A stretch of DNA of 64,000 nucleotides from Rebecca billardiae RCC1528 (Eukaryota > Protista > Haptophyta), in assembly GCA_965240325.2 (NCBI GenBank), contig OZ251223.1:930001-994000 (forward strand). Direction: 5' to 3'. Positions within the stretch are counted from its first letter, which is position 1. The number at the start of each line of letters is the position of its first letter. Of this stretch, positions 4,242-44,589 are shown piece by piece. Both the position numbers and the translations under genes were made by a program. A model generated the notes under the pieces. That model did no database searches and had not been told where the DNA came from. It saw only the letters and a list, made by a program, of their open reading frames with translations.

Positions 4242-6214
4242 TCAGCGCAGTTCCGTCGTCTCGTGTGCGCGCGTCGTCGTGTCGTCGGCCATCAGCCCGG
4301 CGTCATCGCCGTGGGGGACGACCATCGCCTCGCCGTCCTCGAGCAGCAGCATGTGCGCCACCATGTTGTGGAAGCGGTGGAGCGGCTCCTCGAACTTGAA
4401 CGAGTACGTCCCGCCCTCGTATACGCGCGCGTGCAGCCCCTCCGCCAGCGCCTCCACAATCTCCACGTCCTCGCTGTTCACGTTGTGGAAGAAGTCCCAC
4501 GTGGCGTCGAGCCGCGCGCGGAGCTCTGGCCGGTCGAGGACGGTCGGGTGGACGAGCAGGTCGGTGTGCTCGATCGTGCGCCCCGCGGCTGCGGCGGCGG
4601 CGGGGAGGCGGGCACGGTGGGCGCGCGAGCGCGTGAGCGCGCGCGTGCGCGCACACCCAAACGCGCACCCTCGCCCCGCGCGAGCGACCGCGCGCGCGAC
4701 CGCGCGCGCACAGACGGGCTCGAGGCGCACTGTGTACGTCGAATGTGGGTACGCGCTCCAGAAGATGTTGGGGAAGACGCCGTGGTGCTGCGCGCGCGTC
4801 GCGCCGCGCACGACGCCTGGCAGCGTGGGCAGCGCTGATGGGTCGACGGGGGTGCCTCCGTCCGTGAGCGGGTCGGTCACGAAGCCCATGTACATGCCCC
4901 ACCCCTGCTGCCGCTGGTGCTCGCCCACGCCCGACACGGTGCACAGCGCCGGGTGCACGGCCGGGAGGTGGTAGTACTCGAGGAAGTTCTCCATCAGCTG
5001 CTTCCAGTTCGCCGAGACGTCGAAGCGCGCCGAGCGGTACGGCACGAGCTCGTCCATCGGGTGCTCGTCCAGGTCCTCCACGACGCGCCCGAGGTAGCTC
5101 TGCAGCGGGGGCGCGTCGCCCGACAGGTTGACAAAGACCTGCCCGGCCCACGTGTCGACGCGCACGGGGAAGAGCGAGTGCTCTGCCTTCTTGAACGCGG
5201 CGTCCTCCGGGATGTCGAACGCCGCCCGCGTGCGCGCGTCCACCTTCGAGCCGTCCTCCCACATCGGCGTCGCCACCAGCCGGCCGTCGAGCGCGTAGCC
5301 CCAGCGGTGGTACGGACACACGATGGCAGGGTAGCGGCCGGCCGTGCGCACGAGCTTGGAGCCGCGGTGGCGGCACACGTTGTAGTACGCCTTGAGCTCG
5401 CCCTTCTTCGTGCGCGTCACGAAGATGGGCTGCGAGCCGACGCGCGTGGGGAACGTGTCTGCGCCACCGCGCGAGGGGGGGGCGCGCAGGGGTAGGGAGC
5501 GACGGGCGCGCGGCGCGGCGCGTGAGCTGCCGCGAGGCGCCGCTCGCGCGCGCGCGACACGCGCACACCGCCGGGCCTGGCAACCTGCGAGATGTGGCCG
5601 ACGCAGTACCACGCGCGCTCGAAAAGGCGCGTGTTCTCCAGCTGGAACGCCTCCTCCGACGTGTACAGCTCGCGGTGCAGCGTGCTCGCGGACGAGATTG
5701 GCCGCTGCGTCTGCGCAAGGAGCGCGCCGAGCGTGCTCTGGCCGATTGAGGCGTCGGCGGCGCGCCGCGTGGCGGCGTTGTGGGCGATCGTGCTCGCAAA
5801 GGCGTGCTCCAGTGCCGCGTCCAGCTCGTGCCCGCTCGGCAGCTCCGGATCCGCTGCCGGCGCAGTCGCCGCGGTTTGGTACGAGCGCGATTCGGCCGGC
5901 ACTTGCGCCGACGCCGAAGCCGCAGCGTCGGCGCCGGCGCCGTCGGCGAGTGTGGAGAGCGCGCGGGACAACAGAGAGTGCGTGCAGATGGGCGGGAACG
6001 AGACGATACGCCGGATCACTTGCGCCATGCACGCACGCGTGGCCGCCCGGCGCGACGGAGGACACGGGCGCGCTGGTTCGGGCTCCAAACGGGGAGTAGC
6101 GCGCCGGCGCGCGAGATAGTGGACGGCCTGAAGAGGCGCAAGGTTCGGCCTCGCAAAGCCGACGACTTCTTGATCAGGCGGAAGTGCCTGTTTCTGTTTG
6201 GAGGAGTCTGACAT
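4242..6214 (-). CDS. Rieske non-heme iron oxygenase of the choline monooxygenase / glycine-betaine demethylase (GbcA/Stc2/CntA-like) class; introns 5459-5568 and 4589-4711
   Basis: Rieske motif NVCRHRG-x-CPYHRWGY; mononuclear Fe site NWKQLMENFLEYYHLPAVHP...NSEDVEI; splicing the GT-AG introns restores VARPGDTFPTRVG and LEPVSAGRTIEH. The N-terminus (ATG 6214) is uncertain and may contain another intron. Confidence 0.88.
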
Positions 6215-6395
6215 GCCGGTTCGTGGAATGAGATTCTAAGGCCAACAAGTTCGATTCTCTCTTGATTCTCCCCATAGGCACTAATTGAGTAACTGCCTTG
6301 ATCATGAACAAACTACAGAGGTGGCGCTTCGTGAACAGAGCGGCCGGCCGGTCGCTCGACCCCACGCGGGAACGGCGCGACCAAAGCACCGAACC

Positions 6396-9300
6396 ATGGC
6401 CGGGCGGCGCGCGCTCGTGATTGGGGGTGGGATCTCGGGAGTGGCGGTATCGCGCTTCCTGGCGAGGGCTGGGTTGGGCGTCACGCTCCTCGAGAAGGGC
6501 CCGCAGCTCTGTGGCGGCGCGTACGCGCAACGTTCTCCCCGCTCATCCACGCGCGTGCGCGCGTACGCGCGCGCCCCCGCGCGCACCGAGCGCCAGCTGA
6601 TGTGCACCGTGCCCGCCCGCCACGCGCGCTCGTCGCAGGACGTGGCACGCAGCGGGCCTCGTCACGCGCTTCGGCGGCAGCCCGAAGCTCAAGAAGCTCC
6701 ACGTCCGCGCGGTGGACATGATGATGGCCGTGCACGAAGAACACGACGTGGACATGCACATCACCGGCTCGGTGCGCCTCATCGAGAAGGGCGACGCCGA
6801 CCGGCTTGCCGAGGCGAAGCACCACGTGGCGATGGCCTCGCTGTACGACAACCCAGCGTACCCGACCCGGCTGATCAGCGTCGACGAGATCGCCGAGCTC
6901 CACCCACTCGTCAGCACGGAGGGGATCGAGGTGCGTCGGCGCGAGCCCCGGGGCGCGCGCCGAGCCGTTGGCGCGCTCTCGCGGCGCGCAGCGGCGTAGC
7001 GGCGCGCGGCGCTGCCCTGCGCATCCCGCGATTGAGCTCGCTTCGCGCGCGCCGCTCCGCGCGCAGTGCGGGGTGTGGACCCCGTCCGACGGCGACGTCG
7101 ACCCAACCCGGCTGACCAACTGCCTCGCCTCGCTGGCCAAGGCCTCGGGCGCGCAGCTGCGTCTGGGCGTGGGCGTGGAGGGCGTGGTCAAGCGGCCGGA
7201 CGGCGCGTTCGAGGTGCGCACGGACACGGAGGAGGTGCTCGAGGCGGACATTGTGGTACGCCACGCCGCGCCGCGCCGGCCCGCGCGCCGCGCGCCGCGC
7301 GCACTCGCTCTGCTGCTCCGCTCACGCGCGCGCCCTTGGCTGCGCGCGCGTCCGGCGTGCGCGCGCGCTGCGGCCTCGGCCCCGGGCGCCGCACAGATCA
7401 ACTGCGCCGGCCTGTGGACGCGCAAGGTCGCGCGGATGCTCGGCATCGAGGTGCCCGCCGTGGTGATCGAGCACCAGTACGTGATCTCGGAGGCGATCCC
7501 GGCGATCCTCGAGCGGCAGGCAGCCGGGCTTCCGCGGCTGCCCGTGCTGCGCGACCTGCGCGCCTCGTCCTACATCCGGCAGGAGCGCGCGGGCCTGCTG
7601 GTCGGGCCGTACGAGGAGGAGTGCAAGATCACCGAGTGGGGCGACGCGCCGCCCGGCTGGTGGACGATGGACCTCTTCCCGGACGCGCTCGAGCGCATCG
7701 AGGAGAACCTCGTCGGCTGCTGCGAGGCGGTGCCGGCGCTCGGCGAGGTCGGGATCGCGTCGGTGGTGAACGGCCCGACGATCTGGGCGTCGGACGGTCT
7801 CGCGCGGGTCGGGCGCTCGACCGTGCCGGGTCTGTACGACCTGAATGTGCAGACGTACGGCATCGCGCAGTCGCTGCCGCTCGCGCACTGGCTCTCCGCC
7901 CTCATCGTCGACGGCGAGGAGCCGTACGCGCTGCCGGACCTGTGCGCGCTCCGCTTCGGCGGCGCCAGCCCGTGGACGCCAGAGCCGTACGTGCACGCCA
8001 AGGTGGCCGAGACGTACTCGTGCAACAACCGCGTCGCGTACCCGTTCGAGAACCGCTCGGCGGGGCGCGAGCACCTGCCGCGCACGCCGCTGCACGCGCA
8101 GCTCGAGAGCGCCGGCGCCGTCTTCGGCCTGGGCGCGGGCGGGGTGCAGTACCCGCTGTACTTCCGAGGGAGCGCCGGCGGCGGCGCAAGCGCGGGCGCG
8201 CGCGACGGCGCGAGCGGCGGCGGCGGCGGCGCGGCAGCGTCGGAGTGCCGCTCATTCTTCGATCACGCGTGGGCGCCGATCGCCGACGCCGAGGCGCAGC
8301 ACGTGCTCAGCGCCGTCGGCATCGCGCACGCCCCGTTCTCCAAGTTCGTCGTCTCCGGCGCCGGCGCGCGCGCGTGGCTCGACAGGCTCACGACCAACGC
8401 GCTGCCCGCCGTCGGCCGCACGCGGCTGACGTACGCTCTTACGCCGACCGGTCGGATCTGGGCAGAGTTCACGGCGGTCGGGCTCGAGGACGGCGGGTAC
8501 TACCTGATCGGCGCGCGCGACAGCGCGACTCTCGACCATGCGCGGCTCGCCGAGGCCCTCCCGCCCGACGGCTCCGTCTCCGTCATCGACCTGACCTCCG
8601 CGGTCGACGCCCTGCACATCGCCGGCCCGCACGCGCCCGCGCTGCTGAGCAGCCTCACCGCCGGCGAGGCGGAGGCGGTGCCGTTCCTCGGCATGCGCGA
8701 GATGCGCGTCCTCGGCGTGCCGACGCGGCTGCTCCGCGTCTCCTTCTCCGGCTGCCCCGGGTACGAGCTCCACGCCGACGCCGCGCACATCGCCGAGCTG
8801 CACGCCGCGATCGCCGCGCACCCGAGCGCGTTCGAGGCGCGCCTCAAGCCATTTGGCAGCTATGCGCTCAACGCGCTGCGCATCGAGAAAGGGTTCAAGC
8901 TCGGCGCGGACCTCGACTTTGCGCACTACACCGAGGCCGGGATCGGCCCGTTCGTCAAGCCGGGCAAGCCCGGCGGGCCCTTCGTCGGCGAGCTCGCGCC
9001 GGACGCCGCGCCGGTCGCGGCCAAGCGCGCGGCCGTGTTTGCGGTGCGCACCTCGGCCTCGGCCGCGTGGAGCGTGCCGTCGGACGCGCCCGTGCGCGAC
9101 GCGGCGGGCGAGCTCGTCGGGTACACGACCTCGGCGGCGCGCGGCGCGCAGACCGGGGGCACCGTGGCGCTCGGCTTCGTGCTCAGCCCGCCGCACGAGC
9201 CGCTCCCCACGAGCGACGGCTGGGCCGTCGAGGCCTACGGCGAGAGCTGGCCGGTGGAGCTGCTGGCAAAGCCACCGGTCGCGGTGAGCGGCCGCCCAGC

Positions 9301-9397
9301 GCCGAGCGCGCAAGCGCAGGCAGACGCGACCGCGGCGGTCGCGGCGGCGGCCGCAGCGGCCGTGCGGTCCGAGCGCGCCACGCAAGCTGCCGGATAG
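6396..9397 (+). CDS. Dimethylglycine dehydrogenase-like flavoprotein (DAO + FAO_M + GcvT + GcvT_C); introns 6521-6638, 6931-7066, 7256-7396
   Basis: GGGISG FAD motif; spliced GGATWHAAGL covalent-FAD histidine motif; DGDVDP, INCAGLW, EHQYVISE, LPVLRD..SYIRQE, RVSFSGCPGYELH, LRIEKG; GT-AG introns restore the frame. Confidence 0.9.
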
Positions 9398-10142
9398 CGG
9401 CTCCTACGCACACATCACACTCCCGACCGCCCTCCGAGCCCGAGCGGCCACGCACGCGCAGCAGAGCCTGGCTGATGAGCGCGTAGCATGAGCGCCGAGG
9501 CCAGTGGCGCATGCCGGGGGCAGTGGCTCTCATCCGTCACGGCCGTCACCGATCGTGCGCGCCCAGGCTGGCCCTGCGAGCGCGTGCAGAATAAATGGCG
9601 CGCGCCCTAGTCCTGGTAGAGGACTGAGCCTGCAGACCATCGTCCATTGCCATCCTGGCCGCGGCGAAAGCAAGCTACTCTGACAGGGCAGCCTGCGCAC
9701 GGCGGATGCCAGCACGGCGGCAGCCGAGCCGACGCTTGCATCGGTGAGCTCGTTCCGAGGATGGGTCTGAGGGCGACGGTCCTGCATTTCACCAGTTTGT
9801 GGCGAGAAATGGCGGAAAAGCCGAAAAGGCCGAATCTCGCCCTGGCACTGCGGGCGGAATCGCGGATCTTGCCCATCATTCGAGTTCAGGCTCACTTTAG
9901 GGACGTTTGGGGTTGGAAACGCCGGTTTGGCGCACCTTGCGCACGACGATTCCCTCCGGGCTCGGTGTATCTCTCGGCGCGCCCGAAAAGGCGCCCACCC
10001 CGGCGCGCACGGGCCAATCGGCACACGGGTTTCAGGACGGATGGTGCCCCTCCGAGAGCGCTCCGGCCGTGACCACCTGAAGACGGCCAAACAGGCGCAG
10101 GCTGACCGAGCGACCGACGCGGACGGGCTGCGCGCGGAGTCG

Positions 10143-13100
10143 ATGCGCACTTGCGCGCTCGCGCGCACGCCGGCGAGCGCATGGGGGACGTACGCGACGG
10201 CGCGCGCGTGCATCCGGGCCCTCTCATCCCGCGCAGCGGCGCTGCCCTCCTCCGTCGACGTCGCCGTCGTCGGCGGCGGCTCCGTCGGCGCGGCGACTGC
10301 GTACCACTTGGCGCGCAAGGGCCTGAGCGTGGCGCTGCTCGAGGCGCACCAGCTGACGGCGGGGACGACGTGGCACACGGCGGGAATGCTCTGGCGGCTG
10401 CGCCCCTCCTACGTCGAGAACGAGCTCAACGCGCACTCCCGCGCGATGGCCCTCCACTTCGAGGCCGACGAGTCGATCGGGATCAAGTCCTGGCACGAGA
10501 ACGGCGGCCTCTTCATCGCGTGCGCGCGCGAGCGGCTCGCGGAGTACGAGCGGCTGGCTGAGACGGGGCGGTACTACGGGATCGAGTCGCACATCCTCAC
10601 GCCGAGCGAGGTGCGCGAGGTCCACCCGCTCCTCGAGGTCGGCGATGTCGTCGGCGCGCTGCACTCGCCGAGCGACGGCACCATCGACGCGAACGCGCTC
10701 GTGCGCGCGTACGCGCGCGCCGCGCGCAAGCTGGGCGTGACGGTGGCGGAGGGCGTGCGCGTGGCGTCGCTCGAGACGGAGCAGACGACGAGCCCGTTCG
10801 GCGAGCCGGTCACGCGCGTGCTCGGCCTCCGCACCGCGTGCGGGCAGCGCGTGTCCACCGCGCTGGGCGTTGTCAACGCGTGCGGCGCGTGGGCGCCCGC
10901 GCTCGCCGCGATGGCGGGGGCGCAGCTGCCGCTGCTCGCGATGAAGCACGCGTACATCGTGACCGAGTCGATCGAGGGGATGCACGGCGACCTGCCCAAC
11001 GTGCGCGACCACGACCTCAGCGTCTACCTCAAGGCGCGCGCCACCGAATCGCGCCGCGCGCATGCGCGCGCGCCCGCGCGCGCGCCCAGCGCGTCGGATC
11101 CGGCCTCACACCGCACCGCCGCGCGGCCGATCCCCCGCTCCCCGCGCGCGCAGGCGCAGGGCAGCGCGCTCGCGCTGGGCGGGTACGAGCACAACCCCGA
11201 GTTCTGGCACGCCGTCGACCCGGACTTTTCGTTCGGCCTCTTTGACCTCGACTGGGACACGTTCGGTCAGAACCTGGACGGCCACTTCAGGCGCTGCCCG
11301 GCGACGGAGACGGCGGGCGTGGCGTCGACGGTGTGCGGGCCCGAGTCGTTCACGCCGGACCACAAGCCGCTGCTCGGCCCGCACCCCGGCGTGCGCGGCC
11401 TCTTCAACGCGTGCGGCTTCAACTCCGCAGGCATCATGCTCGCCGGCGGCGTCGCGCGCGAGCTCGCGAGCTGGATGGTCGACGGCTCGTCCGAGCTCGA
11501 CCTCTTCGGGTACGACTGCGCGCGCTTCCACCCGGAGTCGGTGGCGGACGCGGGCTGGGTGCGCGCGCGGACGCACGAGGCGTACGCGAAGAACTACGCG
11601 ATCGTCTTCCCGCACGACGAGCCGCTCGCCGGCCGCGGCGCGCGCCGCTCCGCGCTGCACGACGCGCTCCTCGCGCGCGGCTGCGTCTTCCAAGAGCGGC
11701 ACGGCTTCGAGCGGCCGGGCTGGTTCGTGCGCTCGTCGGCGGACGCGGCGGCGGCGAAGGCGAAGGCGGAGGGCGGGGCGGGGCCGGCGGGCTGCCTCGC
11801 GCCCAGGCCGTACGACTACTACGGCGCGTACCCGCCGGGCGACGCGTGGCGGCTGCTGCCGGACGCGGGCGCGGACGTGGGCTGGGCGGCGCACGCCGAG
11901 CACCCGTACTTGGATGCGCTCGCGGCCGAGCTCACCTTTGGCTGGCCGGGCTCGCACGCGCGCGTCGCGGCCGAGTGCGCCGCGGCGCGCACGGGCGTGG
12001 CGATCTTCGACCAGTCGTACTTCGCCAAGCTCGAGGTGCGCGGCGCGGACGCGCACGCCGCGCTGCAGTACGTGTGCGCCGCCGACCTCGACGGCCGCGC
12101 GAGCGGCGCGGTCGTCTACACGCCGCTGTGCAACGCGCAAGGCGGCGTCGAGGCGGACCTGACGGTGACGCGGCTGCCGCCGAGCGCCGCCGCGTCCTCG
12201 GCGGCCTTCTACATCTGCACGGGCGGCGCGACCGCGACCAAGGACCGCGAGTGGATCTCCCGCGCGCTCGAGGGGCGCGGGTACGACGTGAGTCTCACAG
12301 ACGTGTCCGCCGAGCGCGCGCTGCTGTCAGTGCAGGGGCCGCACAGCGCCGCGCTGCTCGAGGCGCTGCTCGACGGCGCGGGGCGCGAGGCGCTGCGCGC
12401 GCTGCCGTTCGCGAGCTGCGCCGAGCTCAGCGTCGCCGGCGTGCCGGACGTGCGCTGCCTCCGGCTCACCTTCGTCGGCGAGCTCGGCTTTGAGCTGCAC
12501 GTGCCGGCGGCGCACGCGGCGCGCGTGCACGCAGCGCTGCACGAGGCTGCGGCGCCGCTGCGCGCAGCGGGCGTCGCGGTCGAGGACGCGGGGTACCACG
12601 CCGTCGACTCGCTCTCGGCGGAGAAGGGCTTCCGGCACTACCACGCCGACCTCTCCGCCGCGGACACGCCGCTCGAGGCCGGCATCGGCTTCACCGTCCT
12701 GCCGAAGCTCAAGAGTCCGGATGCACCGGACTTTGTCGGCCGGGCGGCGCTCGAGCGCGCGCGCGAGGCCGGGCTGCGCCGACGGCTGGTGTGCGTGACG
12801 CTCGACGACCCCGCCGTCGCGCTGCACGGCTCGGGCGCGACGCTGTGGCGCGACGGCGAGTGCGCGGGCGTCGTGCGCCTCTGCGCGTACGGCCACACCA
12901 TCGGCCGCTCGATCGCCTACGGGTACGTGCGCCGCGCCGCCGAGTCGGGAGCCGCGCGGCCGGACGAGTCCGCGTGCGATCGCTCTGGAGAGCGCGTCAC
13001 GCCGGAGTGGCTGCGCGGCGGCACGTGGCAGGTCGGCGACCGCGGCGCACGGCATGCCGCGACGCTGCACCTCAAGGCCCCGTTCGACCCGGACAACGCG

Positions 13101-13247
13101 CGCGTGCGCGGCGAGTACCCGCAGCCGCGCGCCGCCGGCGCGGCCGCGCTGTCGGAGCCGCAGCCGTCTGTGACGGTGGCCGCTGGCGCCGGGCCGTCGC
13201 CAGGGTCGTCCCATCAGCAGCAGCATGCGTCGCAGTCCCAGCAATGA
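10143..13247 (+). CDS. SARDH: Sarcosine dehydrogenase-like mitochondrial flavoprotein; probable GC-AG intron 11034-11153
   Basis: Arg/Ala/Ser-rich transit-like N-terminus; GGGSVG, TAGTTWHTAG, NVRDHDLSVYLK, CGPESFTPDHKPLLG, GFNSAGIMLAGG, YAKNY, FQERHGFERPGWF, FVGELGFELH, LSAEKGFRH and TPLEAG match SARDH-type motifs. Confidence 0.88.
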   Translation: MRTCALARTPASAWGTYATARACIRALSSRAAALPSSVDVAVVGGGSVGAATAYHLARKGLSVALLEAHQLTAGTTWHTAGMLWRLRPSYVENELNAHSRAMALHFEADESIGIKSWHENGGLFIACARERLAEYERLAETGRYYGIESHILTPSEVREVHPLLEVGDVVGALHSPSDGTIDANALVRAYARAARKLGVTVAEGVRVASLETEQTTSPFGEPVTRVLGLRTACGQRVSTALGVVNACGAWAPALAAMAGAQLPLLAMKHAYIVTESIEGMHGDLPNVRDHDLSVYLKARATESRRAHARAPARAPSASDPASHRTAARPIPRSPRAQAQGSALALGGYEHNPEFWHAVDPDFSFGLFDLDWDTFGQNLDGHFRRCPATETAGVASTVCGPESFTPDHKPLLGPHPGVRGLFNACGFNSAGIMLAGGVARELASWMVDGSSELDLFGYDCARFHPESVADAGWVRARTHEAYAKNYAIVFPHDEPLAGRGARRSALHDALLARGCVFQERHGFERPGWFVRSSADAAAAKAKAEGGAGPAGCLAPRPYDYYGAYPPGDAWRLLPDAGADVGWAAHAEHPYLDALAAELTFGWPGSHARVAAECAAARTGVAIFDQSYFAKLEVRGADAHAALQYVCAADLDGRASGAVVYTPLCNAQGGVEADLTVTRLPPSAAASSAAFYICTGGATATKDREWISRALEGRGYDVSLTDVSAERALLSVQGPHSAALLEALLDGAGREALRALPFASCAELSVAGVPDVRCLRLTFVGELGFELHVPAAHAARVHAALHEAAAPLRAAGVAVEDAGYHAVDSLSAEKGFRHYHADLSAADTPLEAGIGFTVLPKLKSPDAPDFVGRAALERAREAGLRRRLVCVTLDDPAVALHGSGATLWRDGECAGVVRLCAYGHTIGRSIAYGYVRRAAESGAARPDESACDRSGERVTPEWLRGGTWQVGDRGARHAATLHLKAPFDPDNARVRGEYPQPRAAGAAALSEPQPSVTVAAGAGPSPGSSHQQQHASQSQQ

Positions 13248-13969
13248 TAGAAGTATGTTGACGGCATTGGAATCAGCAGGCGGCAGGATGACCTGATCCG
13301 TCACTAGACACTAGCCAGTCTAACTGCTGCGTCTGCAGTGCTAGCTGCCCGTTTCATCAGTTGAAGTTCGGCTACTCTGTTCTCAGTTATTCTGACTGTT
13401 GTCTGTTCTGACGAGTTCAACGGTTATTTATTATTATATTTATTACGGTTCCGCGGCCGCGCCCCCGCCCGCGGTCGCGGAGCACTGTGTCGCGCGTCAA
13501 TCAATCAGTGCGCGCACGCGTGCCTCGGGCTGCGGGCAACTGCCAAGCTGGCTCTGGCAGCGCATGCTCGCATTGCTCACGATCGAATACGGAATAATTG
13601 GCAGGCGCCAGCGTCGTCTACAGTTTACTAAGTAGATTAAGAGACGCACACAGCTCAGGCAGGCGCGATATTGACGCCCGCCAACTGTTACCGCCCATGA
13701 AGCCGTCGCTGATGGTAGCACCGTCGGAAGATTCGTTCAGCCGTCCGCCTGCGAGGCCTGGATCGGAGGGCTGCGGCCGCCTCGCGGCGCGCCAGCGCCC
13801 GTCGTCCTCGCCCCACCGTCGTCCACAAAACGTCGTCGCTTCTGGACAGTATCTTATTGACAATCAATGACAGCAAGGTCTTGATCACCGTCTGAATATC
13901 AAAGGACAGCGCAGTGCTTGCCAACGGCGGCGGCACGCACCTTCGTCGTCAACCTTGCCGCGCACAACG

Positions 13970-15709: not shown

Positions 15710-16292
15710 ACCGTCCCGCCGGAAGCTCAAGAGCCCGGACGCACCGGGCTTCATCGGCCGAGCGGCGCTCGAGCGCGCACCTGAGGCCGGGCTGCGCCGC
15801 CGGCGTGCGCCGCCGACAGCCGTCGTTGAAAGTGTGCTTGACGCTCGACGACCCCGCCGTTGCGCTGCGCGGCCCTCTGGCGCGACGCTGTGGCGCGACG
15901 GCGTGTGCGCGGGCGTCGTGCGCCTCTGCGCGTACGGCCACACCATCGGCCGCTCGATCGCCTACGGGTACGTGCGCCGCGCCGCCAAGTCGGGAGCCGC
16001 GCGGCCGGACGAGTCCGCGTGCGATCGCTCTGGAGAGCGCGTCATGCCGGAGTGGCTGCGCAGCGGCACGTGGCAGGTCGGCGACCGCGGCGCGCGGCAT
16101 GCCGCGACGCTGCACCTCAAGGCCCCGTTCGACCCGGACAACGCGCGCGTGCGCGGCGAGTACCCGCAGCCGCGCGCCGCCGGCGCGGCCGCGCTGTCGG
16201 AGCCGCAGCCGTCTGTGACGGTGGCCGCTGGCGCCGGGCCGTCGCCAGGGTCGTCCCATCAGCAGCAGCATGCGTCGCAGTCCCAGCAATGA
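15710..16292 (+). pseudogene. Duplicated 3' fragment of the SARDH-like gene
   Basis: Matches 12693-13247; frameshifted and diverged in the first ~170 bp, near-identical afterwards; no 5' part of the gene. Confidence 0.88.
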
Positions 16293-17004
16293 TAGAAGTA
16301 TGTTGACGGCATTGGAATAAGCAGGCGGCAGGATGACCTGATCCGTCACTGGACACTAGCAGTCACTGCTGACGTCTGCTGCTGCCCGTTTCAGTTATTA
16401 ATTCGTCTCTTAAGTCTGCTTATTCTGAGTTCAACGGCGGTTTATTAATATATTATTCACGGTTCCGCGGCCGCGCCCCCGGCCGCGGTCGCGGAGCACT
16501 TATGTGTCGCGCGTCAATATCAATCAGTGCGCGCACGCGTGCCTCGGGCTGCGGGCAACTGCCAAGCTGGCTCTGGCAGCGCATGCTCGCGCATGCTCAC
16601 GATCGAATACGGAATAATTGGCAGGCGCCAGAGTCGTCTACAGTTTACTAAGTAGATGAAGAGACGCACACAGCTCTGAGCTCAGGCAGGCGCGATATTG
16701 ACGCCCGCCAACTGTCACCGCCCATGAGGCCATGAAGCCGTCGCCGATGGTAGCGCCGTCGGAAGATTCGTTCAGCCGTCCGCCTGCGAGGCCTGGATCG
16801 GAGGGCTGCGGCCGCCTCGCGGCGCGCCAGCGCCCGTCGTCCTCGCCCCACCGTCGTCCACAAAACGTCGTCGCTTCTGGACAGTATCTTATTGACAATC
16901 AATGACAGCAAGGTCTTGATCACCGTCTGAATATCAAAGGACAGCGCAGTGCTTGCCAACGGCGGCGGCACGCACCTTCGTCGTCAACCTTGCCGCGCAC
17001 AACG

Positions 17005-20034: not shown

Positions 20035-20628
20035 ACCGTCCCGCCGGAAGCTCAAGAGCCCGGACGCACCGGGCTTCATCGGCCGAGCGGCGCTCGAGCG
20101 CGCACCTGAGGCCGGGCTGCGCCGCCGGCGTGCGCCGCCGACAGCCGTCGTTGAAAGTGTGCTTGACGCTCGACGACCCCGCCGTTGCGCTGCGCGGCCC
20201 TCTGGCGCGACGCTGTGGCGCGACGGCGTGTGCGCGGGCGTCGTGCGCCTCTGCGCGTACGGCCACACCATCGGCCGCTCGATCGCCTACGGGTACGTGC
20301 GCCGCGCCGCCGAGTCGGGAGCCGCGCGGCCGGACGAGTCCGCGTGCGATCGCTCTGGAGAGCGCGTCGCGCCGGAGTGGCTGCGCAGCGGCACGTGGCA
20401 GGTCGGCGACCGCGGCGCACGGCATGCCGCGACGCTGCACCTCAAGGCCCCGTTCGACCCGGACAACGTGCGCGTGCGCTGCGAGTACCTGCAGCCGCGC
20501 GCCGCCGGCGCGGCCGCGCTGTCGGAGCCGCAGCCGTCCACTGTGGCCGCTGGCGCCGTGCCGTCGCCAAGGTCGTCCCATCACTCATCAGCATCAGCAG
20601 GCATGCGTAGGCTTCGCAGTCCCAGCAA
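20035..20628 (+). pseudogene. Second duplicated 3' fragment of the SARDH-like gene
   Basis: Matches 15710-16292, with more substitutions and insertions near its 3' end. Confidence 0.85.
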
Positions 20629-41776: not shown

Positions 41777-43360
41777 ATGGCGGCAGCTCTTGCGATCGCC
41801 GTGGCGCTCCTGCCTCCGCTCCTAGCGAGCGGCACCGCGTCGCCGCCCCCCAAGGTGGAGCACTTTGTCGTCCTGTTCATGGAGAACCGCCCATTCGACC
41901 ACATCTTCGGCTGCGCCACCGCCGAGCTCAAAGGCATCGACGGCCTGACTGGGCGCGAGTTCAATTGGCGGGACCCGAACGACCACTCCAAGGGCCGCGT
42001 GTACGCCACGTGCGGCGACGCGCCGTACGTGTGCGAGCACGACAATGACCACTCGTTTCCAGGCACCACCGTCGACATCTTCGGGCCCAACCGCACCGAC
42101 GGCGCGCACGCCCCGTACCCTCCGCCGACGATGGGCGGATTCGCAAACCGCTCGGGCGAGCAGACGATGCGCGCGTTCAAGCCCGAGCAGCTGCCGATCA
42201 AGCTCGCGCTCGCGCGCGAGTTCGCCGTGTTCGACCGCTTCCACGCGGCCGTGCCGGGCCCGTCCCAGCCCAACCACATGTTCGCGCAGTCCGCCACGGC
42301 GTGCGGCGTGACGGAGACCGGGACCGTGTTCACGGAGTGCGGCGGCCTGCTTCCGCTCTTCCCGCAGCGCACCATCTACGACGCGCTGCTGGAGGCGGGG
42401 CACGAGTTCAACGTGTTCATCAACGGCTCGCTCGACGAGGGCGTCCCCGGCGACGTCTTCCTCTGGGGCCTGCTGCGCCACCTGCCGCCGCGGCTGCACA
42501 CGTTCTCCTCGCCTCGGCATGGGCTGTTTGCGCGCGCGGCCGCGGGGACGCTCCCGGCGCTCTCGTGGGTGCTCCCGCGCGGCGGCGGCGACGCGCCGAA
42601 CGACGACCACCCGTGCCACGACGTCGCGCTCGGCGAGGCGCTGCTCAAGGCCGTGTACGAGGCGCTGCGTGCCGGGCCCAAGTGGGAGTCCACCGCGCTG
42701 CTGGTCGTGTACGACGATGCTGGCGGCTTCTTCGACCACGCGCCGACGCCGATGCGCGCGCCGCCGCCGCGCTCGCCGTGCGACATCGGCCCCGGCTGCC
42801 CGGACGCGTTTAGCTTCGACCGGCTGGGGCTCCGGCTCGCCGCGCTGCTCATCTCGCCGTTCGTGCCGCGCGGGCACGTCATCCACGACCCGCCCGGACC
42901 GCCGGGCACGCCGTTCAGGCCGGCGGCTGACTCCAAGTACGAGCTGTCGTCCATCCCCGCGACTCTCAAGCACCTGTTCGGACTGCCCCGCTTCCTCACC
43001 GAGCGCGACGCGTGGGCGGGCGCGTTCCACGGCGAGCTGGCGCTGGAGCGGCCGAGGCGGGACACGCCGGCGCGGCTGCCCGAGCCGCCGCAGCCAGCCG
43101 CGCCGCACGGCCGCCGACGGCACGGCTGCAGCCCGACCGGCGAGCTCACGCGCCGCCAGCGGCGGCAGATGCAGCTGTACGCGCGGCTGCTGGGAGAGCA
43201 GGCTCCGGGCTGGCTCTCGGGCGCCGGGAGTGACGAGAGCCGCGCTGACGCCGTGCTCGACCGGCACGAGGCTGCGGATAGGTGGCTCGGCTATGCGGCC
43301 CGCCGGCTGCTGACGCGCGTGCGCGACGGAGTTCTGCCCCGCCTGGCGGATGAGCTGTGA
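41777..43360 (+). CDS. Secreted phosphoesterase / non-specific phospholipase C (NPC/AcpA family)
   Basis: Signal peptide; FMENRPFDH, PGPSQPNH, DDHP, YDDAGGFFDH, FDRLGLR, YELSSIPATLK, LTERDAWAG. Confidence 0.9.
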   Translation: MAAALAIAVALLPPLLASGTASPPPKVEHFVVLFMENRPFDHIFGCATAELKGIDGLTGREFNWRDPNDHSKGRVYATCGDAPYVCEHDNDHSFPGTTVDIFGPNRTDGAHAPYPPPTMGGFANRSGEQTMRAFKPEQLPIKLALAREFAVFDRFHAAVPGPSQPNHMFAQSATACGVTETGTVFTECGGLLPLFPQRTIYDALLEAGHEFNVFINGSLDEGVPGDVFLWGLLRHLPPRLHTFSSPRHGLFARAAAGTLPALSWVLPRGGGDAPNDDHPCHDVALGEALLKAVYEALRAGPKWESTALLVVYDDAGGFFDHAPTPMRAPPPRSPCDIGPGCPDAFSFDRLGLRLAALLISPFVPRGHVIHDPPGPPGTPFRPAADSKYELSSIPATLKHLFGLPRFLTERDAWAGAFHGELALERPRRDTPARLPEPPQPAAPHGRRRHGCSPTGELTRRQRRQMQLYARLLGEQAPGWLSGAGSDESRADAVLDRHEAADRWLGYAARRLLTRVRDGVLPRLADEL

Positions 43361-43470
43361 CGCCTCCGAGAATGACGACGACTCAGCTTGAAGCTGGTGA
43401 CCGGACTCTGCCTCCCCCGCCCAGGGATTCTCCTGGGCCGTCGCCGTCTCATCATCTTCGTCGCTCGGCG

Positions 43471-44589
43471 ATGGCCGACCAGGAGCCCACGCCCACCACC
43501 AGGGTCGTCGTGGCATTGGACTGGACGCCCAATGGCAACCATCTCGGCTTCTACGTCGCGAAGGACGCGGGGCTGTACGCAGCTGCGGGACTGGACGTCC
43601 GCCTGCTCAGCCCGCACGACCCCGACTACGGCGGCTCGTACGTGCCCGCTCCGGCGGCGGATGGCGCGACGTCGGGGGGCGCGCCGGCGTACGTGACGCC
43701 ATGCAGCAAGGTGGCGGCCGGGGAGGCGCACTTTGCGATCAACTCGCCAGAGGGCGTGGTCGGCTGGAACACCGCCCCCGACCGGCCGCAGCTCAAGGCC
43801 GTCGCCGCGCTGCTCCACGACTGCAACACGTCAGCGATCGTGACCCTCAGCTCCTCTGGTCGCAGCCGGCCGCGCGAGCTCGACGGCTGCCGCTACGCGT
43901 CGTACGCCGCGCGCTTCGAGGGGAGGATCGTACAGAAGCTCATCCAGAACGACGGCGGCAAGGGCGACTTCGTCGAGGACACGCCGCCCATGCTCGGCAT
44001 CTGGAACACGCTGCTCGAGGGCAAGGCGGAGGCCACCTGGGTGTTCCTGCAGTGGGAGGGGGTCGAGGCGCAGCTCAAGGGCGTCGAGCTCAACGCCTTC
44101 CGGCTGCGCGACCATGGCGTGCCGTACGCGTACGCGCCGTGCCTCTGCGCCGACCCGGCCTGGCTCGCCGCCAACGCCGAGACGGCGCGCCGCTTCCTCG
44201 CCGCAACGGCCGAGGGCTACCGCCGCGCGGCGGCGGAACCGCGGCCCGCCGCCGACACGCTCGTGCGCGTTGCGGCCGTCGAGAACGCCGGCTTCGCGGT
44301 GGACCCTGCGTTGGCGGTCGCGAGCGCCGAGTACCTCGCCGGCGCGTTCCTCGACCCGGCCACCGGCCGCTGGGGCGCGATGGACGAGCGCGTGTGGAGC
44401 GAGTACCTGCAGTGGCTCTGGGACGCGGGGCTGCTCACGACCGGCATGCAGAGCCGCCACCCGGACGGCGGCCGCACGTTCTCGCTCGACGAGCTGCGCG
44501 CGGGCAAGGCGGGGCAGCGGATCCCTCTCGAGACAGTGCCGAAGGTCTTCACCAATGACTACCTCCCGCCCGCCGAGAGCGTGGGCTGA
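43471..44589 (+). CDS. NMT1/THI5-like (ThiY/SsuA fold) protein, probably thiamine-pyrimidine related
   Basis: LDWTPNGNHLGFYVA, RYASYAARFEGRIV, ATWVFLQWEGVEA, FTNDYL; intronless; no signal peptide. Confidence 0.8.
   Translation: MADQEPTPTTRVVVALDWTPNGNHLGFYVAKDAGLYAAAGLDVRLLSPHDPDYGGSYVPAPAADGATSGGAPAYVTPCSKVAAGEAHFAINSPEGVVGWNTAPDRPQLKAVAALLHDCNTSAIVTLSSSGRSRPRELDGCRYASYAARFEGRIVQKLIQNDGGKGDFVEDTPPMLGIWNTLLEGKAEATWVFLQWEGVEAQLKGVELNAFRLRDHGVPYAYAPCLCADPAWLAANAETARRFLAATAEGYRRAAAEPRPAADTLVRVAAVENAGFAVDPALAVASAEYLAGAFLDPATGRWGAMDERVWSEYLQWLWDAGLLTTGMQSRHPDGGRTFSLDELRAGKAGQRIPLETVPKVFTNDYLPPAESVG

What the first reader, a model, noticed from the sequence alone, without database searches (positions are those of the whole stretch)
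4242..13247. Three-gene eukaryotic cluster that could encode complete oxidative glycine-betaine demethylation (Rieske demethylase, then DMGDH, then SARDH)
Seen: three adjacent intron-containing genes with nothing between them. A Rieske oxygenase of the quaternary-amine class is head-to-head (181-bp gap) with a DMGDH-like gene, followed on the same strand by a SARDH-like gene. Established: betaine is degraded to dimethylglycine, sarcosine and glycine. Bacteria such as Pseudomonas (GbcAB) use a Rieske monooxygenase for the first step, whereas characterised eukaryotes use the methyltransferase BHMT and use CMO-type Rieske enzymes for betaine synthesis. Inference: the enzyme that would be auto-annotated as choline monooxygenase may be a betaine N-demethylase, making this an operon-like catabolic cluster for osmolyte N/C recycling in an alga. 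Its Fe-site motif (ENFLEYYHLPAVHP) looks more like the bacterial ExYH..H type than plant CMO (DNYLDGGYH). No reductase partner is encoded in the window.
Basis: partly seen in the sequence, partly recalled or inferred. Interest (0 to 1): 0.88.

Follow-up and report, generated by a model that had tools for sequence, protein, structure and literature searches.

The report
Algal Rieske–DMGDH–SARDH methylamine gene cluster
A GC-rich, probably haptophyte, alga keeps three neighbouring genes (a choline-monooxygenase-like Rieske oxygenase, a divergent dimethylglycine dehydrogenase and a sarcosine dehydrogenase) that are also linked or fused in distant protists, which suggests an undescribed eukaryotic route for stripping the methyl groups from glycine betaine, although the Rieske enzyme's substrate is still unproven.

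Summary
Window 4242-13247 holds three intact, intron-containing genes: a group-V Rieske oxygenase (minus strand), head-to-head with a DMGDH-lineage flavoenzyme, followed by a clear SARDH orthologue.

The linkage is not chance. The Rieske/DMGDH-like divergent pair recurs in the chlorarachniophyte Amorphochlora. The two proteins are fused in one ORF in at least two separate lineages, once next to SARDH. Other pairwise linkages occur in labyrinthulid-type contigs and in Hondaea.

- The Rieske protein is not a GbcA/BmoA/Stc2-type demethylase. It scores 106-165 bits on the GbcA model (cut-off 670; Stc2 scores 496).
- It has Phe, not Asn, at the position that separates C-hydroxylating (Va) from N-demethylating (Vb) group-V enzymes.
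- It sits in a 54-member protist clade nested among bacterial "CMO-like" enzymes, which are followed by aldehyde dehydrogenases.

Gene context still favours betaine to dimethylglycine as the Rieske step: it gives a complete three-step pathway, and the fused or paired partners would be consecutive enzymes. I put this at about 0.45. Choline oxidation (about 0.3) and other quaternary-amine chemistry remain open. I found no paper describing this module.

The parts
4242..4588 (-). Rieske oxygenase, exon 3 (stop codon 4244-4242). Carries the Fe ligand D443.
   Evidence: Sequence reading and homologue alignment.
4589..4711 (-). Rieske intron 2: 123 nt, GT-AG, in frame. It is read through in the database protein P0001.
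4712..5458 (-). Rieske exon 2: the [2Fe-2S] Rieske domain (C182, H184, C201, H204) and the first half of the catalytic domain.
   Evidence: Pfam PF00355 and PF00848; ligand columns.
4950..4991 (-). Fe-site motif ENFLEYYHLPAVHP. F312 is at the position of CntA Y203, E314 is the bridging carboxylate, and H317 and H322 are Fe ligands.
   Evidence: Alignment with CntA and Stc2; rule from PMC7948474.
5459..5568 (-). Rieske intron 1: 110 nt, GT-AG, phase 1.
   Evidence: The spliced product restores the conserved stretch GHISQVARPGDTFPTRVG.
5569..6028 (-). Rieske exon 1 with an Arg-rich N-terminal extension of about 115 aa. An alternative in-frame ATG lies at 6214.
   Evidence: Third-position GC favours the ATG at 6028.
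6029..6395 (.). Divergent intergenic and 5'UTR region shared by the Rieske gene and gene 2 (probably a bidirectional promoter).
   Evidence: The same head-to-head pair occurs in Amorphochlora.
6396..6520 (+). Gene 2 (DMGDH-lineage flavoenzyme), exon 1. The FAD-binding GxGxxG motif starts at residue 10, so there is no presequence.
6639..6930 (+). Gene 2 exon 2. It starts with the covalent-FAD motif (A)TWHAAG.
7067..7255 (+). Gene 2 exon 3.
7397..9397 (+). Gene 2 exon 4: the rest of the DAO domain and the GCV_T folate-binding domain, stop codon included.
   Evidence: Pfam; alignment; splice scan.
10143..11033 (+). Gene 3 (SARDH orthologue), exon 1, with a presequence of about 43 aa and the motif TTWHTAG.
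11154..13247 (+). Gene 3 exon 2 (FAO_M, GCV_T and GCV_T_C domains, stop codon included). It follows a 120-nt in-frame GC-AG intron at 11034-11153.

Best explanation
The three genes are one catabolic module that removes the three N-methyl groups of glycine betaine to give glycine.

Proposed steps:
1. The Rieske oxygenase is a member of a protist clade of 'CMO-like' group-V enzymes. It hydroxylates one N-methyl of the quaternary amine, releasing formaldehyde and dimethylglycine. Electrons would come from a general ferredoxin system encoded elsewhere.
2. The DMGDH-lineage flavoenzyme (covalent FAD, folate-binding GcvT domain) converts dimethylglycine to sarcosine.
3. SARDH converts sarcosine to glycine.

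What is shown and what is inferred:
- Shown: gene structures, intact cofactor ligands, family placement of all three proteins, and recurrent linkage and fusion.
- Inferred: the substrate and regiochemistry of the Rieske step, and co-regulation from the shared divergent promoter.
- If correct, N-demethylation arose here independently of the bacterial GbcA/BmoA/Stc2 lineage.
For: Coupling of the Rieske gene and the DMGDH-like gene:
- A head-to-head pair in the window, and again in Amorphochlora amoebiformis. There an unannotated Rieske gene of at least 8 exons lies about 1 kb upstream of the gene-2 homologue on the other strand.
- Single-ORF fusions DMGDH-like::Rieske in P0276 and P0269; P0364, at 1270 aa, has the length of a fusion and its N-terminal part is sister to P0276. 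P0276 and P0269 fall in different subclades of both trees.

Links to SARDH:
- SARDH is adjacent to the P0276 fusion.
- SARDH is adjacent to the gene-2 homologue in L004.
- SARDH is adjacent to the Rieske gene in L005.
- All three genes lie within about 27 kb in Hondaea.

Protein identities:
- Gene 3 is 44-46% identical to animal SARDH over its full length and sits inside the SARDH clade.
- The gene-2 clade groups with an animal DMGDH representative (P0374, 1076 bits to rat and human DMGDH) on one side of a branch with SH-aLRT support of 100.
- The gene-2 clade keeps the invariant TWHAAG motif.

Chemistry and parsimony:
- A quaternary N-methyl cannot be removed by a flavin dehydrogenase. It needs a methyltransferase or an oxygenase. 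A group-V (quaternary-amine) Rieske enzyme is exactly such an oxygenase.
- With betaine as substrate, the cluster encodes a complete three-step pathway, and the fused or paired partners are consecutive enzymes.
Against: - The Rieske protein is not related to known betaine demethylases beyond family level. On the GbcA model the window ORF scores 106 bits and full-length clade members 130-165 bits. Stc2 scores 496 and CntA 154; the cut-off is 670.
- It carries the Va signature (Phe, where N-demethylases have Asn) and lacks the Cys-x-x-Cys pair (PMC7948474, PMC10952381).
- The four bacterial relatives whose neighbourhoods I examined are followed directly by an aldehyde dehydrogenase, and two of them lie near OpuAC or BCCT transporter genes. 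This fits an aldehyde-forming reaction rather than demethylation.
- Characterised or genetically studied relatives act on choline: plant CMO2, and yeast Cmo1 (PMC6157903, PMC5816127).
- Linkage is absent in Saprolegnia, Prymnesium and one further contig, L098.
- No expression data were listed.
- No biochemical data exist for any member of the protist clade that I could find.
Confidence: 0.45

Rival explanations
1. The Rieske enzyme is a true choline monooxygenase (choline to betaine aldehyde hydrate). The cluster would then hold steps 1, 4 and 5 of choline-to-glycine catabolism, with betaine aldehyde dehydrogenase and a betaine methyltransferase (BHMT-type) encoded elsewhere.
For: - Family placement: JGI names for many hits are 'choline monooxygenase', and the nearest named Atlas cluster is the Streptophyta CMO cluster.
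- The aromatic Va signature is shared with CMO.
- Bacterial relatives are operon-coupled to aldehyde dehydrogenases whose best model hit is often BADH, though below cut-off. They sit near OpuAC or BCCT transporters.
- Yeast Cmo1 is needed for growth on choline (PMC5816127).
Against: - Fused or divergently paired partners would be non-consecutive enzymes (steps 1 and 4).
- No aldehyde dehydrogenase lies near any protist copy examined.
- Plant CMO1-type enzymes probably do not use choline (PMC6157903).
- The bridging residue is Glu, not the plant Asp (PMC6157903).
Confidence: 0.3
2. The Rieske enzyme acts on another quaternary or methylated amine. Candidates are C-N cleavage of choline or carnitine-type compounds to trimethylamine plus an aldehyde (as CntA does and as proposed for yeast Cmo1), or demethylation of another betaine such as proline betaine, homoserine betaine or betaine-lipid head groups. 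The DMGDH-like partner would then be specialised for that product.
For: - The Va signature and the similarity to CntA.
- The proposed yeast Cmo1 reaction (PMC5816127).
- The long stem branch of the gene-2 clade (0.79 substitutions per site) suggests a functional shift.
- An invariant His sits at the CntA Y225 pocket position.
- The Hondaea Rieske gene lies next to a CaiB-type CoA-transferase and a 2OG oxygenase.
- The genome has betaine-lipid genes, according to unchecked notes of this scan.
Against: - SARDH, a conserved sarcosine enzyme, is repeatedly linked to both partners.
- Gene 2 stays in the DMGDH lineage with all cofactor motifs.
- No trimethylamine-handling genes were seen nearby.
Confidence: 0.15
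3. The adjacency is a historical accident without a shared pathway. It would reflect shared mitochondrial one-carbon housekeeping genes, or an inherited block, with no functional link for the Rieske gene.
For: Linkage is missing in several relatives. Eukaryotic clusters can persist by descent.
Against: There are fusions in at least two lineages and the same divergent pair in a chlorarachniophyte and a haptophyte-like alga. Every pairwise combination of the three genes is seen as a neighbouring pair somewhere.
Confidence: 0.05

Closest known systems
GbcAB / BmoAB glycine betaine monooxygenase (Pseudomonas, Chromohalobacter)
   Same: A group-V Rieske/mononuclear-iron oxygenase acting on a quaternary amine. 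The proposed reaction (betaine to dimethylglycine plus formaldehyde) and its place ahead of dimethylglycine and sarcosine demethylation are the same.
   Different: - Not an orthologue: 106-165 bits on NF058607 against a cut-off of 670.
- Phe instead of Asn at the Va/Vb position, and no Cys-x-x-Cys pair.
- No GbcB-type reductase gene found in the window.
- Eukaryotic, spliced, and paired or fused with a DMGDH-type flavoenzyme.
Stachydrine demethylase Stc2 (PDB 3VCA) and carnitine monooxygenase CntA (PDB 6Y8J)
   Same: These are the best solved-structure matches (E about 1e-22). The Rieske ligands, 2-His-1-carboxylate site and bridging Glu are the same.
   Different: Only about 30% identity. Homology to Stc2 and CntA is clear mainly over the N-terminal half plus the Fe motif. 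The signature residue matches CntA (aromatic), not Stc2 (Asn). In the tree the protist clade is separate from both.
Plant choline monooxygenase family (CMO2 of Amaranthaceae, a bona fide enzyme; CMO1, substrate unknown) and the 'bacterial/fungal CMO-like' proteins of Carrillo-Campos et al. 2018 (PMC6157903)
   Same: The same broad family by automatic naming and by language-model similarity. There is an aromatic residue two positions before the bridging carboxylate.
   Different: The bridging residue is Glu (Asp in plant CMO, per PMC6157903) and the motif spacing differs. The clade is nested among bacterial CMO-like sequences. No plant sequence could be fetched, so the relationship was not tested by a tree.
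Yeast Cmo1 (Scheffersomyces stipitis)
   Same: A non-plant eukaryotic CMO-like Rieske enzyme used for catabolism of a quaternary amine as nitrogen source (PMC5816127).
   Different: It is thought to split choline into trimethylamine and glycolaldehyde. I know of no DMGDH or SARDH partners for it. It has never been assayed biochemically.
Animal choline/betaine pathway: BHMT, DMGDH, SARDH
   Same: Gene 3 is orthologous to SARDH and gene 2 belongs to the DMGDH lineage. Both have covalent FAD and a folate-binding GcvT domain.
   Different: The first demethylation would be oxygenative rather than a methyl transfer to homocysteine. The DMGDH-like protein has no N-terminal presequence. The genes are clustered or fused.

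Membership tests
GbcA/BmoA glycine betaine monooxygenase (NCBIfam NF058607) | Full-length score at or above the curated cut-off (670 bits) | tested here: not met
   The window ORF scores 105.9 bits, on its N-terminal half only. Clade members P0002, P0020 and the Rieske part of P0276 score 165, 155 and 131. For comparison, Stc2 scores 496 and CntA 154.
Group Vb Rieske N-demethylases (GbcA, BmoA, Stc2) | Asn at the position of CntA Tyr203, two residues before the bridging Glu (PMC7948474) | tested here: not met
   The window has Phe312. Across the 128 aligned sequences the column holds 106 F, 17 Y, 3 A and 2 N, and the two Asn belong to the two Vb reference sequences.
Group Vb / CntA-type | Cys-x-x-Cys pair beside the mononuclear iron (PMC10952381) | tested here: not met
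   The window has Tyr and Leu at these positions. Cys occurs only in CntA, Stc2 and the Cereibacter reference.
GbcAB/BmoAB system | Dedicated reductase gene (GbcB/BmoB/Stc4-type) next to the oxygenase gene | tested here: inconclusive
   None was found by Pfam scans of long ORFs in the window, but spliced genes may have been missed. In a eukaryote a general ferredoxin system could serve instead.
Group V (quaternary-amine) Rieske oxygenases, clade Va | Rieske CxH...CxxH ligands, 2-His-1-Asp iron site, bridging carboxylate, and an aromatic residue at the CntA-203 position | tested here: met
   C182, H184, C201, H204, E314, H317, H322, D443 and F312 are all present. The best solved-structure matches are Stc2 and CntA.
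Plant-type choline monooxygenase subfamily | Asp as the electron-transfer bridging residue and plant-type domain pair cd03541/cd08883 (PMC6157903) | tested here: inconclusive
   The bridging residue is Glu in all 128 aligned sequences, unlike the plant Asp. CDD assignment and a tree with plant sequences could not be run. The nearest named Atlas cluster is Streptophyta CMO.
Any betaine or choline oxygenase | Demonstrated substrate and product | not testable with these tools
   I found no biochemical data for any member of the protist clade.
DMGDH (gene 2) | DAO plus GcvT architecture, histidine for 8-alpha-N3-histidyl FAD in the motif (S/A)TWHAAG, and placement with animal DMGDH | tested here: met
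   - Pfam DAO and GCV_T are found.
- TWHAAG is invariant in 20 clade members.
- Full-length alignment of P0265 to human DMGDH gives 345 bits.
- The clade groups with animal DMGDH representative P0374 at SH-aLRT 100. This is a quick tree with one animal representative.
DMGDH (gene 2) | Mitochondrial matrix location (N-terminal presequence), which gives access to ETF | tested here: not met
   There are 9 residues before GxGxxG in the window protein and 1-30 across the clade. SARDH and DMGDH sequences mostly have 30-80, with a full range of 10-79. This is judged by length only; no targeting predictor was available.
SARDH (gene 3) | DAO, FAO_M, GCV_T and GCV_T_C domains, full-length similarity to animal SARDH, and placement in the SARDH clade | tested here: met
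   All four Pfam domains are present. Identity to vertebrate SARDH is 44-46% at 100% coverage. The protein lies inside the SARDH clade (support 100), next to Prymnesium and Emiliania.

The most novel reading that the evidence does not exclude
The DMGDH-like flavoenzyme is not only the next enzyme in the pathway but also the reductase of the Rieske oxygenase. The two electrons taken from dimethylglycine by its covalent FAD would pass to the Rieske centre and pay for the hydroxylation of the next betaine molecule. The pair, or the fusion protein, would then be a self-sufficient machine that needs neither NAD(P)H nor ETF and converts betaine to sarcosine outside the mitochondrial matrix.

This would explain three things:
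- the fusions;
- the missing presequence of the DMGDH-like clade;
- the absence of a reductase gene.
Probability: 0.12. Interest if true: 0.9.

Novelty: new variant of a known kind. Interest (0 to 1): 0.68.

Why it matters
[quoted passage not shown] Its demethylation is currently credited almost entirely to bacteria. Eukaryotic routes are assumed to be BHMT-based, and no phytoplankton BHMT homologue has been verified (PMC9321204). A eukaryotic oxygenase route would change how betaine turnover by algae and heterotrophic protists is counted in metatranscriptomes, where these genes are now labelled 'choline monooxygenase', a synthesis enzyme.
- **An orphan enzyme family.** The module gives the first concrete, testable functional lead for the widespread CMO-like Rieske family, whose substrate is unknown outside a few plants (PMC6157903).
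- **Enzyme evolution.** If the reading is right, N-demethylation evolved twice within group-V Rieske oxygenases, and the published Va/Vb residue rule would not predict reaction type.
- **Ready-made test objects.** The natural fusion proteins can be expressed directly to test the pathway.

Tried and rejected
- **GbcA orthology: rejected** by model scores and signature residues.
- **Tree with plant CMO, GbcA/BmoA and yeast Cmo1: not possible.** No tool gave me those sequences. The plasmid search yielded Stc2, CntA, a Cereibacter Vb-type enzyme and three Rieske-plus-ALDH enzymes, which I used as references.
- **Metagenome scan with a gene-2 alignment.** It returned almost only bacterial DMGDH-like loci. 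Only 2 of 80 had a Rieske gene nearby, so it said nothing about protist synteny.
- **RNA evidence.** No RNA run was listed. One DNA sample held a small share of the words. I did not use read laying because it could not show expression.
- **Naming the bacterial neighbour ALDHs as BADH.** The best hits stay below the cut-offs, so this is inconclusive.
- **C-terminal CIA-targeting tripeptide as a sign of cytosolic location.** It is absent in all 54 protist sequences.
- **Structure prediction: not run.** The tools return no coordinates, so the substrate pocket could not be inspected, and the fusion proteins exceed the size limit.
- **Earlier notes of this scan on BHMT or a reductase in this genome.** Nothing was found.
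Full report
**What is in the sequence**

The region is about 70% G+C. Long ORFs overlap on all frames, so I built gene models from homologue alignments and splice-site scans.

Rieske gene (minus strand):
- CDS 6028..5569, 5458..4712 and 4588..4242, giving 517 aa.
- Two GT-AG introns. The second (123 nt) is in frame, which is why the database protein derived from this DNA (P0001) reads through it.
- Pfam finds a Rieske domain and the catalytic Ring_hydroxyl_A domain.
- All cofactor ligands are present: C182, H184, C201 and H204 for the cluster; E314 as bridge; H317, H322 and D443 for iron.
Third-position G+C is only 0.65 between 6214 and 6029, against 0.88-0.96 in the exons. The ATG at 6028 is therefore the likelier start, and the two start codons are 367 bp apart.

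Gene 2 (plus strand):
- CDS 6396..6520, 6639..6930, 7067..7255 and 7397..9397, giving 868 aa.

Gene 3 (plus strand):
- CDS 10143..11033 and 11154..13247, giving 994 aa, with one in-frame GC-AG intron.

**What the two flavoenzymes are**

Gene 3 is a sarcosine dehydrogenase orthologue:
- It has all four Pfam domains.
- It is 56-59% identical to protist sequences and 44-46% identical to vertebrate SARDH over the whole length.
- It lies inside the SARDH clade, next to Prymnesium and Emiliania. This also supports the haptophyte guess made elsewhere in this scan.

Gene 2 belongs to a compact eukaryotic clade:
- Members are 40-57% identical to one another. Bacterial 'DMGDH/GcvT family' proteins are only 27-35% identical.
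- A full-length member aligns end to end with human DMGDH at 345 bits.
- In a tree, the clade joins two unnamed sequences and then an animal DMGDH representative (P0374, 1076 bits to rat and human DMGDH). These form one side of a branch with SH-aLRT 100, against bacterial relatives plus SARDH.
- The motif TWHAAG, which carries the histidine for covalent FAD in DMGDH (PMC5082570), is invariant.

So 'DMGDH-like' is right, with three caveats:
- The tree was a quick search, and only one animal sequence was available.
- The clade sits on a long stem (0.79 substitutions per site).
- Its members have only 1-30 residues before the FAD-binding GxGxxG, whereas most SARDH and DMGDH sequences have 30-80. 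A classical matrix presequence is therefore lacking.

**What the Rieske enzyme is, and is not**

Family placement:
- The best solved-structure relatives are stachydrine demethylase Stc2 and carnitine monooxygenase CntA. It is therefore a group-V, quaternary-amine type Rieske oxygenase.
- It is not a GbcA/BmoA orthologue. On the curated GbcA model (cut-off 670 bits), Stc2 scores 496 and a Cereibacter Vb-type enzyme 485. CntA scores 154, protist clade members 131-165, and the window ORF 106.
- Quareshy et al. (PMC7948474) divide group V by one residue. It is Tyr/Phe in enzymes that bind the trimethylammonium group by a cation-pi contact and oxidise a chain carbon (CntA, CMO, OxyBAC; clade Va). 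It is Asn in the N-demethylases (GbcA, BmoA, Stc2; clade Vb).
- The window has Phe312. The column is Phe or Tyr in 123 of 128 aligned sequences and Asn only in my two Vb references.
- The Cys-x-x-Cys pair of CntA and Stc2 is absent.

That difference says nothing about demethylation, and the diagnostic residue points the other way.

Position in the tree:
- The window protein lies in a strongly supported 54-sequence protist clade. The clade includes oomycetes, Hondaea, Prymnesium, Emiliania and both fusion proteins.
- This clade is nested among bacterial 'CMO-like' sequences, well away from Stc2 and CntA.
- JGI names for many members are 'choline monooxygenase'. The nearest named Atlas cluster is the Streptophyta CMO cluster.
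- I could not obtain plant CMO, yeast Cmo1 or authentic GbcA sequences, so their exact relation is untested.

**What is known about that family**

- Carrillo-Campos et al. (PMC6157903) argue that only Amaranthaceae CMO2 is a real choline monooxygenase. They conclude that the substrate of the ubiquitous CMO1 type is unknown, and they define bacterial and fungal 'CMO-like' proteins.
- Yeast Cmo1 is required for growth on choline as nitrogen source. It is thought to split choline into trimethylamine and glycolaldehyde, but it has never been assayed (PMC5816127).
- In the four bacterial relatives whose neighbourhoods I read, the Rieske gene is followed directly by an aldehyde dehydrogenase. These are a Nitriliruptoraceae contig, Acinetobacter baumannii, a Pseudomonas plasmid and a Phaeobacter plasmid. 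Two of them lie near transporter genes (OpuAC in Nitriliruptoraceae, BCCT in Pseudomonas), and reductase genes sit nearby in Pseudomonas and Phaeobacter.
- That context fits an aldehyde-forming reaction.

**Gene context in eukaryotes**

1. Logan contig L002: a single uninterrupted 1308-aa ORF (P0276) joins a gene-2 homologue to a Rieske homologue. It lies head-to-head with SARDH.
2. JGI contig L011: a second fusion of 1374 aa (P0269). A third long representative (P0364, 1270 aa) is sister to P0276.
3. P0269 and P0276 fall in different subclades of both the Rieske tree and the gene-2 tree. This means two fusion events, or an old fusion followed by fissions.
4. Amorphochlora amoebiformis (Rhizaria): an unannotated Rieske gene with at least eight collinear exons (L097 9033 down to 1558, minus strand) lies about 1 kb from the start of the gene-2 homologue on the other strand. 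This is the same divergent pair as in the window.
5. L004: a gene-2 homologue is followed by SARDH in tandem.
6. L005: the Rieske gene lies 3.3 kb from SARDH.
7. Hondaea fermentalgiana: SARDH, the gene-2 homologue and the Rieske gene lie within about 27 kb.

No linkage was seen in Saprolegnia, in Prymnesium (same chromosome only) or in one ENA contig, L098.

**Weighing the readings**

Flavin amine dehydrogenases cannot attack a quaternary nitrogen. Any organism that feeds a DMGDH-type enzyme and SARDH needs a methyltransferase or an oxygenase upstream.

- If the Rieske enzyme takes betaine, the cluster is a complete three-step pathway, and the partners that are fused or share a promoter are consecutive enzymes.
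- If it is a choline monooxygenase, the cluster holds steps 1, 4 and 5 of five. The fusion would join non-consecutive enzymes, and no aldehyde dehydrogenase accompanies any protist copy I examined.

On the other side stand the family placement, the Va signature and the bacterial context. Hydroxylating an N-methyl carbon rather than a chain carbon next to the same nitrogen is a small regiochemical change, so a second origin of demethylation is plausible but unproven.

My estimates:
- betaine (or a closely similar betaine) N-demethylation: 0.45
- choline oxidation: 0.30
- other quaternary-amine chemistry: 0.15
- no shared pathway: 0.05
- the remaining 0.05 is left unassigned

**An unexplained point and the most novel reading**

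- The DMGDH-like clade, including the fusions, has no room for a presequence.
- Stand-alone Rieske proteins carry Arg-rich extensions of 50-130 aa, and SARDH has a presequence.
- If the DMGDH-like enzyme is not in the matrix, ETF cannot take its electrons.
- One possibility is that its FAD reduces the Rieske centre directly, so that dimethylglycine oxidation pays for betaine hydroxylation. Human DMGDH FAD is at -93 mV (PMC5082570). Rieske centres of oxygenases are, from my own knowledge, near -150 mV, so the transfer would be slightly uphill but pulled by oxygen activation.
- This is speculation. I give it about 0.12.

**Novelty**

Eight literature searches found nothing on a eukaryotic Rieske-DMGDH-SARDH cluster or fusion.
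- Ngugi et al. noted only that 'CMO-like' genes of Symbiodiniaceae resemble carnitine oxygenases more than plant CMO (PMC7240134).
- Boysen et al. state that no phytoplankton BHMT homologue is verified, and they count betaine demethylation as bacterial (PMC9321204).

The components are known kinds. The combination, the family recruited and the fusions are new. I file it as a new variant of a known kind.

Noticed in passing
window 15710-16379 and 20035-20594: The last 550-670 bp of the SARDH gene (12693-13336) are duplicated twice, at 92% and 90% identity. Each copy lies just after a copy of the SEL1-repeat/MYND gene. The tandem duplication unit therefore began inside SARDH and left two 3' gene fragments. 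The second fragment still scores as GCV_T_C in Pfam.
   Followed up: partly
L097 1558-9033 (minus strand), Amorphochlora amoebiformis BAAHQB010000027.1: A complete-looking Rieske oxygenase gene of the protist clade, with at least eight exons, is not among the called genes of this record. Only a 75-aa product is listed at L097 7315-7829.
   Followed up: partly
L006 3770-6392; L007 5773-8419; L008 5794-8396; L009 8001-10708: Bacterial relatives of the Rieske enzyme in Acinetobacter baumannii, a Pseudomonas plasmid, a Phaeobacter plasmid and a Nitriliruptoraceae contig are each followed directly by an aldehyde dehydrogenase. A BCCT gene (Pseudomonas) or OpuAC genes (Nitriliruptoraceae) lie nearby, and in Phaeobacter there is an 806-aa DAO-GcvT enzyme. 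This looks like an uncharacterised quaternary-amine pathway.
   Followed up: partly
L001 13224-17260 (Hondaea fermentalgiana): The Hondaea Rieske gene is followed by an 852-aa CaiB-type CoA-transferase (CoA_transf_3) and a 2OG-Fe(II) oxygenase. This gene set is reminiscent of carnitine and butyrobetaine metabolism.
   Followed up: no
L004 1113-2519 and 13371-14753: In this labyrinthulid-type contig, the gene-2/SARDH tandem is flanked by a cytochrome-b5/NAD-binding reductase fusion and a 460-aa Pyr_redox_2 flavoprotein. Both are possible electron-transfer partners.
   Followed up: no
window 4589-4711, 7256-7396, 11034-11153: Three of the six introns are in frame, a multiple of three in length, free of stop codons and as GC-rich as the exons. 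ORF-based gene callers therefore read through them. The database proteins P0001 and P0241 from this DNA carry the intron translations.
   Followed up: yes
window 41777-44589: A phosphoesterase-family (phospholipase C-like) ORF is directly followed by an NMT1/THI5-like ORF on the same strand.
   Followed up: no
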